From Fonticula alba ATCC 38817 (lineage: Eukaryota; Protista; Nucleariida): a DNA stretch of 19,168 bases. The notes under the pieces are model-generated. The model ran no database searches and was not told the DNA's origin. It saw only the letters and a program-made list of their open reading frames with translations. The first letter of the stretch is position 1; every line of letters begins with the position of its first letter. The position numbers were made by a program, and so were the translations under genes. Location of the stretch: NCBI GenBank assembly GCA_000388065.2, contig KB932205.1; one strand, given 5' to 3'. Shown here piece by piece: positions 5,801-19,168 of the stretch.

Positions 5801-7521
5801 AAACAATCGATGGAAAACAGACGCCGAGAGAAATCAAAATCGAAGCCGGAACGATAGTCCATCGAGGCGAAAAGGCCCTGCATGGAGGCGGACGCCGAAG
5901 GCACGTTGATGGCCTTCTCCAGGGGCTCCGGACAGTCGTCCGCGTCGTCCAAGCTGCCAGGAGATGGCAGGAGTAGTAGCAGCAGCGGGAGCAGCAAAGG
6001 ACACGGGGAGGAATTAGCCGGCGGACGAAAAGCATGACACAGGAAGAGGCCGGCAAGGCGACGGCGCGGCGGACGGCGCACCAGCTGGCCGGGCGCTTCT
6101 TGCTGCGGACCGGGGCGCCGGGTTGGCCGGCGGGCTGGAAGCCGAAAACCTCCAAGATGGACGCCTGAGATGCCAGGGTCCGGGCCAACTCCGCCGGATC
6201 CATGTAAGGGGGGCGCCAGTGGAAATAGACGTCCCCACCGAGAGCCGACTGGTGGGCTGGCGAATGGCCGAGCCACCGGCCGCGCGGCAGCCCATCGCAA
6301 TCGGACACCAGGGCGGGCTGGGCGTCGTCACCGCGGAAGCGCAGCGCCAAGCTCCACTCGAGCACGGCCTCCGACAAATCGGCGGTCTTGGTTTGGTCAC
6401 AGGCAGAGAGGGGTCAATGCCGGGAGGAAGGAGAAGCCACCAGGCGCGCAGAGCGCCCCCGGTGCCGCCACAAACAAGCTCGGCCCGCATGGACGCACCT
6501 TGTCCCAGGCGTCGACCTGCGGGTGGCCGGTCGGGGCATACACCGCCACCCGGCCCATTTGGCTGACGGCGGCGAGGATGCACCCGCCGGAGGGGGCCAT
6601 ACCACGGCCCGACCAGGCCGCCTGGAGGAAGGTGTCCTCGGGAGAGCCGGACCCGGCGCCGAGGATGGCCGTTCGCTCGGCCGCCGGCCCGGCGGTGATG
6701 CCGATGTCCGAGCTCCCGGCACAGGCGCCGGACCCGACGTTGGCCCCGGAGATGCCGCCGATCTCGGCGTCCGCCAGCCCCGGGCGCAGGTCCACAGCCT
6801 GGCCAAAGATCGCATTCGGCGGGAGCGGCCCGAAGTGCGCATACCCGCGGAGCTTCTGCAGCTGGGCCAAGGACGGGGCCCGGAGGCGCGAGTTGTTGGG
6901 GATCGCCCCAACCAGCGCTCGGAAGCGCAGCGATCCCAGGGGAAAGGGAATGGGCGTAGGGCCGGGAGGGCCTGGCCGAGCCGCTAGGCCATCGGGCGAC
7001 CGGGTGTCCTCACCTGCCGCGGCCTCCGCCGCCGCCGCCTCCTCCTCCTCCTCCTCCCCCATGGCTGGGGGCTCGTAGCCGGGCTGGAGATCCGGCCGCA
7101 CGCGGAAGGAGGCCAAGGGCGACTCGTGAGGCGCGGCCGGCAATTCCGGCAGCTGGAGGATGGTCGTCCGGGCAAAGGTCGGTCCCGCCTGGAGGGACTG
7201 TTGTCGGCACAGCGACCGAGTCGGCGCGCGCGGCAGCGAGGGAGGGGGCGCAGGAGCGAGAGGGGAGGAGACAGGAATTGGTCACGATCAGTGGCGGTGG
7301 GGGGTTTCAAAACCGAGGAGGGCAGGAAAAGGCCGAAGAGAGGATCCCGGCAGTTGACGGACCAACACGGCGAGCGACTTCCCGGTGACCACCACAAGGA
7401 AGCCGTCCTCGGAGAAGGTGATGTTCCCCCGGCCTCCCGGCGGTGCATGGCAAGGGGTCGACCCGAGCAGCACCGATGGCGACGGGAGGACGGGGTTTGG
7501 CAGCTCGGCGGCAGACTGCAT
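2502..7521 (-). CDS. GTF3C4: General transcription factor IIIC subunit 4 (TFIIIC90 / tau60 / Tfc8-like), 9 exons, ~1291 aa
   Basis: Exons 7521-7363, 7197-6499, 6386-6082, 5953-5790, 5664-5565, 5429-4773, 4608-3947, 3859-2900 and 2671-2502 join in frame (3876 nt). N-terminal beta-propeller motifs: ITFSEDGFLVVVTGKSLAVL (human LAWSEDHRVSVSTARSIAVL) and AAWSGRGMAPSGGCILAAVSQMGRVAVY...WDKTADLSE (human TSWSPMGCDANGRCLLAALTMDNRLTI...WVQLVDLTE). WD-type segments VLAWSP...LLLGNRCGMVSLWD and FLLAAGCSDGSVAVWRV are present. The C-terminal zf-TFIIIC pattern is CLPC...CEKGHAVGLCSLSLLPL...CVHC...CPMC. The start codon could lie in a further upstream exon. Confidence 0.85.
2775..2836. repeat. (GT)31 / (AC)31 microsatellite in the last intron of GTF3C4
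   Basis: Perfect dinucleotide run read directly from the sequence. Confidence 0.98.
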
Positions 7522-15991: not shown

Positions 15992-17117
15992 NGGGGGGGG
16001 GGGGGGGGGGGGGCACAGGGCGCCGCCCGCGCCGTCCGCGCCGTCTCGATCTGTTCTACAGAAGCGCCGGGGCCGCGGCAGTATGCGGGCCAGGACTCGC
16101 GCCAGTATGCGGGCCAGACTCGTGCCTCCCTCGCCCCCGCCCGCAGGGTGGATGGAGACCGCATGTCCTGGGTCGGCCGCGGTGCCGGAAAAAAAGCTGA
16201 CAGAGCCGGCCCCGAACGCACGAAGGGTCGACCGAGCGCGAGGGAGAGGGAGACAGAGGGAGAGAGAGAGAGAGAGCGAGGGTAGGCCGTCCGAATGCAT
16301 TGGCAGATGGCTGTTTGGCCAGGGTCGCCCGCCGCCCGCACCCCAAGGGCTCCGCGAAGGGAGGCCGAGCCACCCCCGCCTCCCCTGTCTGGACCCCCTT
16401 TGTGCGGGAGCTCGCCCCCCCTCTCTCCCGGTTGGTAACTCCGTCGCCGGGGGGCAGGTTCGTTTTGATCTAACCCTCTTGGGGAGGGAGCCGAGGGCGA
16501 ACCCTGGGCCCGTGCCGCGCGTGTCCCCGCGAGACATGCATGTGACCTTTCCACCGGCACAACGCCGACCCTGCAATGTGCGTGCGCCATCCCCGCCGGC
16601 AGTACGTTCCCGCTGGTCCGGCGGACGGGAGGGAGACTGCCGCCCTCTCGCTGCACCAACAGGCCCAGCTCCCGGTCCGTACTCCACATCAGGGGGGTGG
16701 GGGAGCATCGCCGAAGAAAAAAAAAACACCCACACGGGGACCATGAGAACGATCGGCAGCCGGCACAGGCTCTCCGATATACTGGCATGTATTATTTATT
16801 TGACAGAGAGGCCAACGTGGGCGCTTGGCGTGCTTCAGCGCCTCTCCAGGGCGCCGCGGGCGCTGGGGGCTAGCTGGAGTGCGGCCGGCCATGGGCGAGA
16901 TGGCTCCGATCGTGAGGCTGACGATCCCTCCTGCCAGGGGACCGGGTTGCCCCCGAGAAGGCCTCCGCCCTGCCCCGGATCAAAGTCCTCCAGTGCAGGC
17001 TGAAAGGGCACCAGGGCCTGCGACGGGCACACCGATCCTGGAGGGCACCCTCCCCCTCTGCCCTATTCCCCCCCCCCCCCCCCACCCCCCTACACTTGAC
17101 GAGAGAGAGAGATCGAT

Positions 17118-18877
17118 ATGTCCGCCTCCCCTGCCCGCATTCCCCTCGGTGGGCCGACGGCCAAGCTTCCGTCCGACTCGGTGTTCCGCATCGAGATCAA
17201 CAAGGACCGGCATAAGTTCGGCTGCGCCCACTGGACCTTCTTCGCTCCGGATCCCCAGGAGGCCGGAAAGGAGGACGGCCCGGTGCGCGCCGAGTGCGAG
17301 CGCCTCCACGGGCACAACTACTATATCCGGGTGTACTTCCATGCTCGCGGGTCCCTGACCCATGGTGCGCCAGCCGGATGCGCCTCTGTCCCCCCCGCCC
17401 CCCCTCCGCCAAGGTGCCGTGGGCGCCCCTCTTTTGCCCGGGGAACGTGGGCTTCCACATGCGCATACAGTCACAGCAAATGGTCCTGGCCAGCCTCAGT
17501 GTGACGAGAGGGCCCGGGATGATGCAATTCCTGGCGAAAGTCAGAACGGATCCAGCCGGGGGGGGGGGGGCGGGGGCGAGCCGGCCCGGGGTGCCAGGCC
17601 GTGCACCCTCAGCACCTGCCCGGAGAGGGTGGCATAGCTGATCCCGGTTTCGGCGCCGGGGAATGGGCTGGGCCGAGGCCGGCCGCCGTTCGGCTCGCAG
17701 GTTGGCCGGGGGCCGAAGGGGGGNNNNNNNNNNNNNNNNNNNNNNNNNNNNNNNNNNNNNNNNNNNNNNNNNNNNNNNNNNNNNNNNNNNNNNNNNNNNN
17801 NNNNNNNNNNNNNNNNNNNNNNNNNNNNNNNNNNNNNNNNNNNNNNNNNNNNNNNNNNNNNNNNNNNNNNNNNNNNNNNNNNNNNNNNNNNNNNNNNNNN
17901 NNNNNNNNNNNNNNNNNNNNNNNNNNNNNNNNNNNNNNNNNNNNNNNNNNNNNNNNNNNNNNNNNNNNNNNNNNNNNNNNNNNNNNNNNNNNNNNNNNNN
18001 NNNNNNNNNNNNNNNNNNNNNNNNNNNNNNNNNNNNNNNNNNNNNNNNNNNNNNNNNNNNNNNNNNNNNNNNNNNNNNNNNNNNNNNNNNNNNNNNNNNN
18101 NNNNNNNNNNNNNNNNNNNNNNNNNNNNNNNNNNNNNNNNNNNNNNNNNNNNNNNNNCCTGCAGTCCACCGTCCTCCCTGCCATCCACCACCCCTGGCGC
18201 CCGGTCCACTGACATGATGCCGCCGTGTCGCCGCCCCTCCCCCTCTCGATGTGCCCGAAGGCATGGTCCTGCCCTTCGACAAGGTGAAGCGTGTTCTCGA
18301 TGAGGCTTGCCGCGAGTGGGATGAGCACATTTTCATTGCCGGGGTACGTCTGCACCGACATGTGTTCTGCTCCGGCCTCCTCGCCATGTGGCCAGGGGAG
18401 CGTGGCGTCAACGGCGCACCCTCGTATTGCCACCCCCCTCCCTCGATGTGTCCCGGTCTGAGGGGCGGAAATGCTCCCACCAAACACGCCAGCCTCCTCT
18501 ACGCCCCTCCCCCTTCCCCTCCTCCGCGCTCCTTCGACAAGCGGTGACTCACCCCCTCTTCTCTTTCCCCTCTTCAAAAGGACTCTCCCTTCCAAACGGT
18601 GTCCCTCATTGGCGAAGACCAGTCCGAGGTGGAAGTGGTCTTCGGACCGCTCCATGGCCCTCGGCGCTATGTCTTCCCTCTGTCGGAGTGCAAGATCTTG
18701 CCCTGCGACAACATCACCAGCGAGTGGCTGGCCGTGCTGCTGGCCCAGAAGTGCGCATGCTTCCCCCGTTCGCCCCTCCTGCGTCGCCCCGCTGTCCTCC
18801 TGCTCCAGCCTGAGCCCCCTTTCTCCCTCCCTTCCTCTCTCCCTCTCTCTCTGACACACGCACACACGCGCGCACAT

Positions 18878-18947
<70 letters not shown>

Positions 18948-19037
18948 TCTCTTTCTCTTTCTCTCTCTCTTTCTCTTTCTCTTTCTCTTTCTCTTTCTCT
19001 TTCTCTTTCTCTTTCTCTTTCTCTTTCTCTCTCTCTT

Positions 19038-19115
<78 letters not shown>

Positions 19116-19168
19116 CCTCTCTTTGACTCGCCATCATCATGGCCGCCACCGCGGTCGCTGCTCAGGCT
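17118..19168 (+). CDS. 6-pyruvoyl-tetrahydropterin synthase-fold (COG0720, PTPS/QueD family) enzyme, PTPS-III-like long form; 3'-incomplete
   Basis: Exons 17118-17364, 18261-18343, 18581-18750 and a probable start of exon 4 at 19166; phases are consistent, but intron 1 contains an N-gap. Protein: ...KFGCAHWTFF...CERLHGHNYYIRV...GMVLPFDKVKRVLDEACREWDEHIFIAGDSPFQTV...RYVFPLSECKILPCDNITSEWLAVLLAQK. It has the Zn-binding AH + HGH residues, the G(M/Y)VxxF motif and the T/S-E-x-L-A motif of the T-fold family. Confidence 0.92.
17724..18158. other. Assembly gap (N run) within PTPS intron 1
   Basis: Run of n preceded by a G-run. Confidence 0.99.
18879..19124. repeat. Compound (CT)n/(TCTCTT)n polypyrimidine microsatellite in PTPS intron 3
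   Basis: About 246 nt of C/T only, made of (CT)n flanks around a hexamer block. Confidence 0.97.

What the first reader, a model, noticed from the sequence alone, without database searches (positions are those of the whole stretch)
17295..17315. Eukaryotic PTPS-fold enzyme with the dual-function CEx2HGH motif: candidate FolB-bypass folate enzyme
The active-site motif reads C-E-R-L-H-G-H. In the COG0720 family, Cx5HGH marks BH4-pathway PTPS-II (animals) and Cx3HGH marks QueD/PTPS-I (queuosine). Ex2HGH marks PTPS-III, which makes 6-hydroxymethyl-dihydropterin and bypasses dihydroneopterin aldolase, as in Plasmodium. CEx2HGH has been described for dual PTPS-I/III enzymes in bacteria. The scaffold here has the long central insert (SPFQTV...RYVFPLSECKILP) seen in Plasmodium-type PTPS-III rather than the short animal form. 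Eukaryotes are not known to make queuosine de novo, so the simplest reading is an intron-containing PTPS-III-type folate enzyme, possibly with retained Cys-dependent activity and possibly of bacterial origin.
Basis: partly seen in the sequence, partly recalled or inferred. Interest (0 to 1): 0.7.

Follow-up and report, generated by a model that had tools for sequence, protein, structure and literature searches.

The report
Malaria-type pterin enzyme gene in Fonticula
The amoeba Fonticula alba expresses a spliced gene, mis-annotated as two fragments, for the same unusual pterin-cleaving enzyme type that malaria parasites use in folate synthesis. Published work says Fonticula still has the ordinary enzyme too, so this is an extra route and not a replacement.

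Summary
The motif C-E-R-L-H-G-H is at 17295-17315 (residues C60-H66) exactly as described. The genome is Fonticula alba.

**Gene.** Transcript contigs from four runs (one study) show GT..AG splicing of three exons: 17118-17364, 18261-18343 and 18581-18750. A fourth exon starts at 19166 and runs into an assembly gap. NCBI splits the gene into two "hypothetical proteins".

**Family.** Each exon aligns, in order, to a profile of long-type ExxHGHNY PTPS proteins. That profile matches Plasmodium PTPS over its full length (E 3e-35), central insert included. It matches QueD and animal PTPS only weakly. The PTPS-III enzyme type and the Plasmodium-like insert are therefore supported.

**What is not supported:**
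- A needed FolB bypass. Maguire et al. 2014 report a folB-folB-folK-folP gene in F. alba.
- A retained QueD-type cysteine. The residue before the Glu varies by clade (K/A/R/V/C/S). Cys also occurs in one diplonemid and in a Gemmatimonadota clade that is not close to Fonticula.

**Function.** In the bacterial relatives that carry Cys-Glu, the neighbouring genes are methanopterin-type cofactor genes. In others a true QueD sits next door. Both fit formation of hydroxymethyl-dihydropterin.

**Limits.** The origin is unresolved, and the C-terminal catalytic Glu cannot be seen in this assembly.

**Verdict.** A new, mis-annotated member of a known enzyme kind, of modest interest.

The parts
17069..17117 (+). 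5' untranslated region; transcript contigs begin between 17069 and 17102
   Evidence: table 8
17118..17364 (+). Exon 1 coding part: 82 codons plus 1 base. Holds the three predicted zinc ligands H38, H64 and H66, and Glu61.
17253..17291 (+). Fonticula-specific 13-residue loop insertion (PQEAGKEDGPVRA) just before the motif. It is absent from all relatives and present in the mRNA, so it is not an intron.
   Evidence: 13-column gap in the profile alignment; contig continuous over 17093-17363 with no gaps
17295..17315 (+). C-E-R-L-H-G-H motif (C60, E61, H64, H66)
17365..18260 (+). Intron 1 (GT..AG, phase 1). It contains the assembly gap of N at 17724-18157.
   Evidence: joint in all four runs
18261..18343 (+). 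Exon 2 (GMVLPFDKVKRVLDEACREWDEHIFIAG). It holds the W-D-E-H motif at the site of the classical Asp-His pair.
18344..18580 (+). Intron 2 (GT..AG, phase 0). A related gene of an unidentified metagenomic eukaryote has an intron at the same position and phase.
18581..18750 (+). Exon 3: the Plasmodium-type central insert and the N-x-[ST]-x-E helix (DSPFQTV...RYVFPLSECKILPCDNITSEWLAVLLAQ)
18751..19165 (+). Intron 3 (inferred; GT at 18751, AG at 19164-19165). It is mostly a CT/CTTT microsatellite.
   Evidence: transcript leaves the genome at 18751; sequence
19166..19168 (+). First 3 bases (GCT) of exon 4. The transcript continues GCTGTGCGATTTCCTCGAGCGCGATCGCCGT (K-LCDFLERDRR). The rest lies in a 1267-N assembly gap.
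   Evidence: loose end at 18751

Best explanation
This is a real, expressed Fonticula alba gene of at least four exons. It encodes a zinc-dependent tunnel-fold enzyme of the long, Plasmodium-type PTPS-III subfamily.

By homology it binds 7,8-dihydroneopterin triphosphate at a zinc held by H38, H64 and H66. Glu61 would act as the base that cleaves the side chain, giving 6-hydroxymethyl-7,8-dihydropterin, the substrate of HPPK. Some 6-pyruvoyl-tetrahydropterin probably forms as a second product, as with the malaria enzyme.

F. alba is reported to keep a fungal-type folB-folB-folK-folP gene. The enzyme would therefore give a second, direct route from the triphosphate that skips dephosphorylation and the aldolase. 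It would not replace a missing aldolase.

Cys60 is a lineage-specific substitution at a clade-variable site next to the catalytic Glu.

Shown: the motif, the splicing, expression, subfamily membership and the gene contexts of the relatives. Inferred: substrate, product and physiological role.
For: - Motif and frame.
- Spliced transcript in four runs.
- Identity with F. alba H696_03523.
- The three exons align in order to profile columns 3-49, 55-80 and 83-130 of the long-type family (E 1e-17, 2e-10, 8e-15).
- The family profile matches P. vivax and P. falciparum PTPS (2A0S, 1Y13) at E 3e-35 to 1e-33 over residues 30-178. QueD and PTPS-II match only at 1e-8 to 1e-4 and only over the N-terminal half.
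- All 123 relatives carry ExxHGH.
- PfPTPS makes 6-hydroxymethyl-dihydropterin, and Glu38 is required for this: PMC2229834.
- ExxHGH marks PTPS-III, and CExxHGH enzymes can serve both pathways: PMC5041015.
- Of the 81 bacterial loci with usable gene context, about 11 (Gemmatimonadota and allied MAGs) place the gene inside a methanopterin-type cofactor cluster (TIGR03123 above its cut-off, an MptN-like ligase). That pathway needs the same pterin product.
- Nine Bdellovibrio-type loci have a true QueD next door, so the long type is not QueD.
Against: - No biochemical test was done.
- The exon holding the invariant C-terminal Glu (E153 in P0089) lies in an assembly gap and could not be inspected.
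- F. alba is reported to have two DHNA domains (PMC4224340), so the folate role would be redundant.
- The classical Asp-His pair reads D-E-H here and D-E-R/K/Y in most relatives.
- A 13-residue insertion sits next to the catalytic Glu.
- Fifteen bacterial loci pair the gene with a short-chain dehydrogenase. In the Gemmatimonadota-type ones I scanned, a pterin-4a-carbinolamine dehydratase domain follows it. This would also fit synthesis of an unconjugated pterin.
- I could not check the F. alba genome myself for FOL1, GCH1, sepiapterin reductase or queC/E.
Confidence: 0.6

Rival explanations
1. The enzyme's physiological product is 6-pyruvoyl-tetrahydropterin or a related unconjugated pterin. 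A short-chain reductase would then make a biopterin-like cofactor, and folate synthesis would rely on the DHNA domains of FOL1.
For: PfPTPS makes both products in comparable amounts. DHNA is reported present in F. alba. Fifteen of the 81 bacterial loci with usable context have an adjacent short-chain dehydrogenase, overlapping the PTPS stop codon in P0089 and P0090. In the Gemmatimonadota-type ones I scanned, a Pterin_4a domain follows it.
Against: The signature Glu is the residue shown to direct side-chain cleavage. The dehydrogenases match no specific sepiapterin or pteridine reductase model. No partner reductase or pterin-dependent hydroxylase was examined in F. alba.
Confidence: 0.2
2. It is a true dual PTPS-I/III enzyme. 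Cys60 also makes 6-carboxy-tetrahydropterin, which feeds a 7-deazaguanine (queuosine-type) pathway in a eukaryote.
For: The CExxHGH register equals QueD's CxxxHGH, and hybrid enzymes are reported to work in both pathways. A Gemmatimonadota clade conserves Cys-Glu on the same long scaffold.
Against: Eukaryotes are not known to make queuosine de novo (established knowledge). Fonticula is far from the Cys-Glu bacterial clade: 64-70 summed bits against 105-116 for the best relatives. The site is otherwise K/A/R/V/S. Family members score below the QueD cut-off. No queC/queE evidence was obtained.
Confidence: 0.04
3. The gene is a decaying or neofunctionalised relic of a transfer: transcribed, but no longer a pterin enzyme.
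For: It is redundant with DHNA. It is divergent: 40-48% identity to its best relatives, and the single exons find nothing in PDB. It has a 13-residue insertion beside the active site. The C-terminus is unseen.
Against: The reading frame is open across three correctly spliced exons and for 10 codons into the fourth. All inspectable invariant residues of the family are kept: F, H, E, L-H-G-H-N-Y, K, P, N and E of the N-x-[ST]-x-E segment.
Confidence: 0.1
4. It is bacterial contamination from the food bacterium or from the assembly.
For: The closest scoring relatives are bacterial.
Against: It has three GT..AG introns that are removed in transcripts. It lies inside a 2.3-Mb scaffold between eukaryotic genes such as a class-I aminoacyl-tRNA synthetase, SH3/EH and Yae1. 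Its GC content is the same as its surroundings.
Confidence: 0.01

Closest known systems
Plasmodium falciparum / P. vivax PTPS (PFF1360w; PDB 1Y13, 2A0S)
   Same: It has the same long scaffold of about 165-180 residues, with the central insert (...Y-x-F-P-x-x-D/E-C-x-x-L/I-P...), the Cys in F-x-C-A-H, the E-x-L-H-G-H-N-Y motif and (in the relatives) the C-terminal S-E-S segment. The family profile aligns to these chains end to end.
   Different: Plasmodium has R-E (no Cys) and D-H-H where Fonticula has C-E and D-E-H. Fonticula has a 13-residue loop insertion before the motif. Plasmodium lacks DHNA, whereas F. alba is reported to have it. The single Fonticula exons do not reach significance against these chains.
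Bacterial PTPS-III (Pribat et al. 2009, as summarised in PMC5041015, PMC4224340 and PMC4674097)
   Same: It has the ExxHGH signature. The closest scoring relatives are Acidobacteriota-type proteins, one of the folB-lacking phyla named for PTPS-III.
   Different: It is a spliced eukaryotic gene, and the host is reported to keep folB. None of the relatives found here has been tested.
PTPS-I/III hybrid enzymes (CExxHGH)
   Same: The seven-residue motif register is identical.
   Different: Membership of that functional class needs a queuosine pathway to serve, and none is known in eukaryotes. The Cys here is a singleton within its part of the tree.
QueD (PTPS-I) and animal PTPS-II
   Same: They share the tunnel fold, the three zinc histidines, and a nucleophile in the loop before H-G-H.
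   Different: QueD and PTPS-II are short (about 120-145 residues) and lack the insert. The profile match covers only the N-terminal half at E 1e-8 to 1e-4. The PTPS-II spacing Cx5HGH is absent here, because residue 58 is Ala.

Membership tests
PTPS superfamily (Pfam PF01242, COG0720) | Significant match to the family model | tested here: met
   Exon 1 scores 22.4 bits, equal to the gathering score. Exons 1, 2 and 3 match the subfamily profile in order at E 1e-17, 2e-10 and 8e-15.
PTPS superfamily (Pfam PF01242, COG0720) | Three zinc-binding histidines (A-H ... H-G-H) | tested here: met
   H38 in F-G-C-A-H-W; H64 and H66 in L-H-G-H.
PTPS superfamily (Pfam PF01242, COG0720) | Conserved C-terminal catalytic Glu (E-S/T-x-x-x segment) | not testable with these tools
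   The last exon lies in a 1267-N assembly gap. Only its first 30 bases are visible, as a transcript loose end.
PTPS-III (folate/methanopterin type) | ExxHGH signature (Glu three residues before H-G-H) | tested here: met
   E61-R-L-H64-G-H66. The motif definition is from PMC5041015.
PTPS-III (folate/methanopterin type) | Forms 6-hydroxymethyl-dihydropterin from dihydroneopterin triphosphate; complements folB | not testable with these tools
   This needs enzymology or complementation. It is shown only for PfPTPS and, per the literature, for bacterial examples.
PTPS-III (folate/methanopterin type) | Host lacks folB (the comparative-genomic hallmark of a bypass) | tested here: not met
   This rests on the literature only. 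A folB-folB-folK-folP architecture is reported for F. alba (PMC4224340). I could not search the genome itself.
Plasmodium-type long PTPS subfamily | Central insert of about 40 residues between the D-x-H segment and the N-x-[ST]-x-E helix | tested here: met
   Exon 3 aligns to profile columns 83-130. The same profile aligns across the insert of 2A0S and 1Y13.
QueD / PTPS-I | CxxxHGH motif | tested here: met
   C60-E-R-L-H-G-H has that spacing.
QueD / PTPS-I | Score at or above the NCBIfam TIGR03367 equivalog cut-off, and the short scaffold | tested here: not met
   Exon 1 scores 18 bits. Full-length relatives score 38-58 bits against a cut-off of 89.25. True QueD paralogues of 119 aa sit next to the long-type gene in nine bacterial loci.
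PTPS-II (biopterin type) | CxxxxxHGH motif | tested here: not met
   The residue six positions before H64 is Ala58.

The most novel reading that the evidence does not exclude
The malaria-type PTPS-III is not an apicomplexan oddity. It would be a bacterial (Acidobacteriota-like) gene that spread into several unrelated free-living eukaryotes: Fonticula, diplonemids and an unidentified GC-rich eukaryote. In Fonticula it coexists with DHNA. That implies a selected role beyond replacing the aldolase, for example a direct shunt from dihydroneopterin triphosphate that makes the poorly known dephosphorylation steps unnecessary, or a two-product enzyme that feeds folate and an unconjugated pterin at once.
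Probability: 0.3. Interest if true: 0.5.

Novelty: new member of a known kind. Interest (0 to 1): 0.35.

Why it matters
- It corrects an annotation. Two "hypothetical proteins" of F. alba are one expressed PTPS-III-type gene broken by assembly gaps.
- It extends the Plasmodium-type enzyme to an opisthokont, and shows that it also occurs in diplonemids.
- It gives a natural case in which DHNA and a PTPS-III-type enzyme coexist. This bears on why Maguire et al. found no clean folB/PTPS replacement pattern in eukaryotes.
- It cautions against reading CExxHGH as "dual function" without looking at the scaffold and the clade.
- The bacterial by-products may interest people who annotate COG0720: a conserved Cys-Glu long-type clade inside methanopterin-type clusters, and QueD/long-type gene pairs.

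Tried and rejected
- The word-index search with exon 1 found only the F. alba fragment itself.
- The exhaustive HMMER search with exon 1 gave only two true relatives at E<1e-3, plus repetitive false hits P0002-P0005 with no PTPS domain.
- The single Fonticula exons found nothing in PDB. The link to Plasmodium had to go through relatives and a profile.
- IQ-TREE with bootstraps failed on a thread-setting error and then timed out, so I used FastTree.
- Exon-wise placement of Fonticula was not stable. Exons 1 and 3 went to a Lys-Glu bacterial clade with one sampling. With another, they went to the Acidobacteriota/diplonemid clade and a Dormiibacterota/Halieaceae group. I therefore make no claim about a donor.
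- I looked for folK/folP/folE next to the bacterial relatives and saw none among the recurrent neighbour clusters.
- Searches of the scan's notes for folate, pterin or queuosine genes in this genome gave nothing usable.
- Paper searches for Fonticula with biopterin gave nothing decisive.
- Pribat 2009 and Phillips 2012 are not held in the library.
- Plasmodium sequences were left out of the trees because they have no reference id here.
- Contamination was rejected because of the splicing.

Full report
**Observation.** The bases at 17295-17315 read TGC GAG CGC CTC CAC GGG CAC, that is C-E-R-L-H-G-H. They are in frame with an ATG at 17118, which makes them residues C60-H66. The window is about 65-72% G+C and carries assembly gaps. 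I confirmed this: exon 1 is 100% identical to NCBI hypothetical protein H696_03523 of F. alba, on the 2.3-Mb scaffold KB932205.1.

**Gene model and expression.** Four small public runs hold contigs of 933-966 nt that lie on 17069/17102-17363, 18260-18342 and 18580-18751. The runs come from two samples of one study, dated 2012, so they are not independent. The contigs skip 896 and 237 bases at GT..AG boundaries. The tool only guesses that these runs are RNA. Clean removal of two GT..AG introns in every run, however, is what spliced transcripts look like.

With the one-base shift the tool reports, the model is:
- exon 1: 17118-17364 (coding part)
- intron 1: 17365-18260, phase 1, containing the N gap at 17724-18157
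- exon 2: 18261-18343
- intron 2: 18344-18580, phase 0
- exon 3: 18581-18750

At 18751 the transcripts leave the genome sequence and continue CTGTGCGATTTCCTCGAGCGCGATCGCCGT. The window ends ...ctcag|gct at 19166-19168, after a long CT/CTTT microsatellite, and the scaffold then has 1267 N. So exon 4 most likely starts at 19166, reading AA|G CTG TGC GAT..., that is K-L-C-D-F-L-E-R-D-R-R. The rest of the coding sequence is simply missing from the assembly.

NCBI's annotation reflects these gaps. It has an 85-aa model that ends in the intron (P0001) and a separate 90-aa model that starts at the Met of exon 2.

All searches were done exon by exon, by reference.

**Family.** Exon 1 alone reaches the Pfam PTPS gathering score. 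The word-index search found only the F. alba fragment. The exhaustive search found two true relatives, P0006 and P0007. These are gene fragments from intron-bearing, GC-rich metagenomic contigs of an unidentified eukaryote.

From these I reached full-length bacterial proteins of 160-180 aa and diplonemid proteins from Diplonema papillatum, Rhynchopus, Sulcionema and Flectonema. A scan of one genome per prokaryotic species confirmed at least 495 relatives. They occur in Myxococcota, Bdellovibrionota, Planctomycetota, Acidobacteriota, Gemmatimonadota, Competibacteraceae and other groups.

A profile of 28 of these proteins (A1) aligns with the Fonticula exons in order:
- exon 1 to columns 3-49 (probability 99%, E 1e-17)
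- exon 2 to columns 55-80 (E 2e-10)
- exon 3 to columns 83-130 (E 8e-15)

The unmatched columns 131-180 correspond to the missing last exon.

**Subfamily.** The same profile hits P. vivax and P. falciparum PTPS (2A0S, 1Y13 and the Glu37 mutants 3M0N and 3LZE) at E 3e-35 to 1e-33 across residues 30-178. This span includes the whole central insert and the C-terminal S-E-S segment. QueD, the QueD-like proteins and animal PTPS match only at 1e-8 to 1e-4, and only over the N-terminal half.

In PfPTPS this Glu (Glu38) is required for making 6-hydroxymethyl-dihydropterin. E38C and E38Q mutants make only the conventional pterin product (PMC2229834).

**The cysteine.** The residue just before the Glu differs between clades.
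- Among the protein-database relatives it is A 60, V 33, K 23, C 2, and others 7. The two with Cys are Fonticula and the diplonemid Rhynchopus euleeides. Its congener R. humris has Ala.
- Among the 81 bacterial loci in which the gene could be read it is K 27, A 17, R 17, C 10, V 4, S 3.

All ten bacterial Cys-Glu sequences (HQCE[T/S]LHGHNY, or HKCEC in one) form one Gemmatimonadota-type group. Fonticula is not close to that group. Summed over its three exons it scores 64-70 bits against them, compared with 105-116 bits against the best Acidobacteriota-type relatives. Cys-Glu has therefore arisen at least three times on this scaffold.

For Fonticula the simplest reading is a lineage-specific substitution beside the catalytic Glu, not a cysteine retained from QueD. 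Extra Cys-dependent chemistry in vitro is not excluded. Family members fall well below the QueD equivalog cut-off.

**Function from bacterial context.** I clustered the open reading frames within 3.5 kb of the gene in the 81 loci where it could be read and scanned the recurrent neighbours. Three patterns appeared.
1. About 11 Gemmatimonadota-type loci place the gene among genes of methanopterin/methanofuran-type cofactor synthesis. These include a probable H4MPT-linked C1 transfer protein (TIGR03123, 311 bits against a cut-off of 244), an MptN-like glutamate ligase, CitG-like and MfnE-like proteins, EthD, and in most a dehydrogenase followed by a Pterin_4a domain. Nine of these loci carry Cys-Glu. 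The tenth Cys-Glu locus (L033) has only an adjacent short-chain dehydrogenase. Methanopterin needs 6-hydroxymethyl-dihydropterin, and PMC5041015 notes that PTPS-III members serve that pathway in Archaea.
2. Nine Bdellovibrio-type loci have a bona fide QueD (119 aa, CxxxHGH, at the TIGR03367 cut-off) directly beside the long-type gene. The two are therefore not redundant.
3. Fifteen loci have an adjacent short-chain dehydrogenase. In P0089 and P0090 it sits in an operon with an ABC transporter. Acidobacteriota-type loci have trmB overlapping the start of the gene.

No folK/folP/folE neighbours recurred. The contexts fit formation of hydroxymethyl-dihydropterin, but they leave room for a role in unconjugated-pterin synthesis in some clades.

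**Is it a bypass in Fonticula?** Maguire et al. 2014 analysed F. alba RNA-seq. [quoted passage not shown] They also found no clear PTPS/folB replacement pattern across eukaryotes (PMC4224340). I could not search the genome myself, so this point rests on that paper.

If it holds, the enzyme is not replacing a missing aldolase. At most it provides a parallel, direct route from the triphosphate. The other part, placement within ordinary PTPS-II, is not met.

**Peculiarities of the Fonticula protein.**
- A 13-residue insertion (PQEAGKEDGPVRA, 17253-17291) lies in the loop immediately before Cys-Glu. It is present in the mRNA.
- W-D-E-H sits where Plasmodium has L-D-H-H. Most relatives have D-E-R, D-E-K or D-E-Y, so the classical catalytic His is a Glu throughout this bacterial and protist group.
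- Identity to the best relatives is only 40-48% per exon.

**Origin.** Exon-wise FastTree placement was unstable between taxon samplings. Bit scores favour the Acidobacteriota-type clade. In the trees that clade also holds the diplonemids and the metagenomic eukaryote, with SH-like support 0.997.

Fonticula intron 2 and the single intron of the metagenomic eukaryote's gene share position and phase: five residues after W-D-E-H, phase 0. This hints that these two eukaryotic genes are related. The Diplonema gene has two introns at other positions. A bacterial origin is plausible, but neither a donor nor the number of transfers can be stated. Plasmodium sequences could not be put in the trees because they have no reference id here.

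**Verdict.** The enzyme-type assignment (PTPS-III, Plasmodium-like scaffold) is well supported by homology. The "needed bypass" and "dual-function" parts are not supported. This is a new, mis-annotated member of a known enzyme kind in an unexpected lineage. Its function is inferred, not shown.

Noticed in passing
window 17118-18813; L001 10001-11696: NCBI annotates this one gene as two hypothetical proteins: H696_03523 (85 aa, ending ...THASV inside intron 1) and a following 90-aa model that starts at the Met of exon 2. Assembly gaps interrupt intron 1 and remove the last exon.
   Followed up: yes
window 18830-19125: A microsatellite of about 300 nt, (CT)n and (CTTT)n, fills most of the inferred intron 3. 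It ends just before the acceptor site and an assembly gap, so it may have caused the gap.
   Followed up: partly
window 17066-17090 and 17555-17576: Very short contigs (31-57 nt, a few up to 332 nt) appear to join the C-rich run before the start codon to a G-rich run inside intron 1, some in inverted orientation. They look like low-complexity assembly artefacts and not like a splice form.
   Followed up: no
L056, L068, L077, L081, L085-L087, L089, L090 (about 6001-6490 and flanks): Gemmatimonadota-type genomes place a long-type PTPS, with a conserved HQCE[T/S]LHGHNY (Cys plus Glu) motif, inside a cluster of methanopterin/methanofuran-type cofactor genes: TIGR03123, MptN-like, CitG-like, MfnE-like, EthD, and SDR plus Pterin_4a. 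This is a candidate dual or methanopterin-dedicated PTPS clade.
   Followed up: partly
L036, L051, L055, L069-L071, L074, L076, L082: In Bdellovibrio-type genomes a true QueD (119 aa, CxxxHGH) lies immediately upstream of the long-type ExxHGH gene, mostly in divergent orientation. This is a conserved pair of two COG0720 paralogues.
   Followed up: partly
L007 5370-6492; L009 7336-8495: In two Acidobacteriota-type contigs the tRNA m7G46 methyltransferase gene trmB overlaps the start of the long-type PTPS gene by 4-11 bases, which suggests translational coupling.
   Followed up: no
L002 3736-4387; L005 4001-4671: An unidentified GC-rich, intron-bearing eukaryote in metagenomes has a VERLHGH long-type PTPS gene. 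Its single intron is at the same position and phase as Fonticula intron 2. Prokaryotic gene callers split the gene in two.
   Followed up: partly
L093 2001-3829: The Diplonema papillatum homologue (KAJ9469281.1, named 'putative 6-carboxy-5...') has two introns near residues 134 and 160. Five diplonemid species carry the family, and one (Rhynchopus euleeides) also has Cys-Glu.
   Followed up: partly
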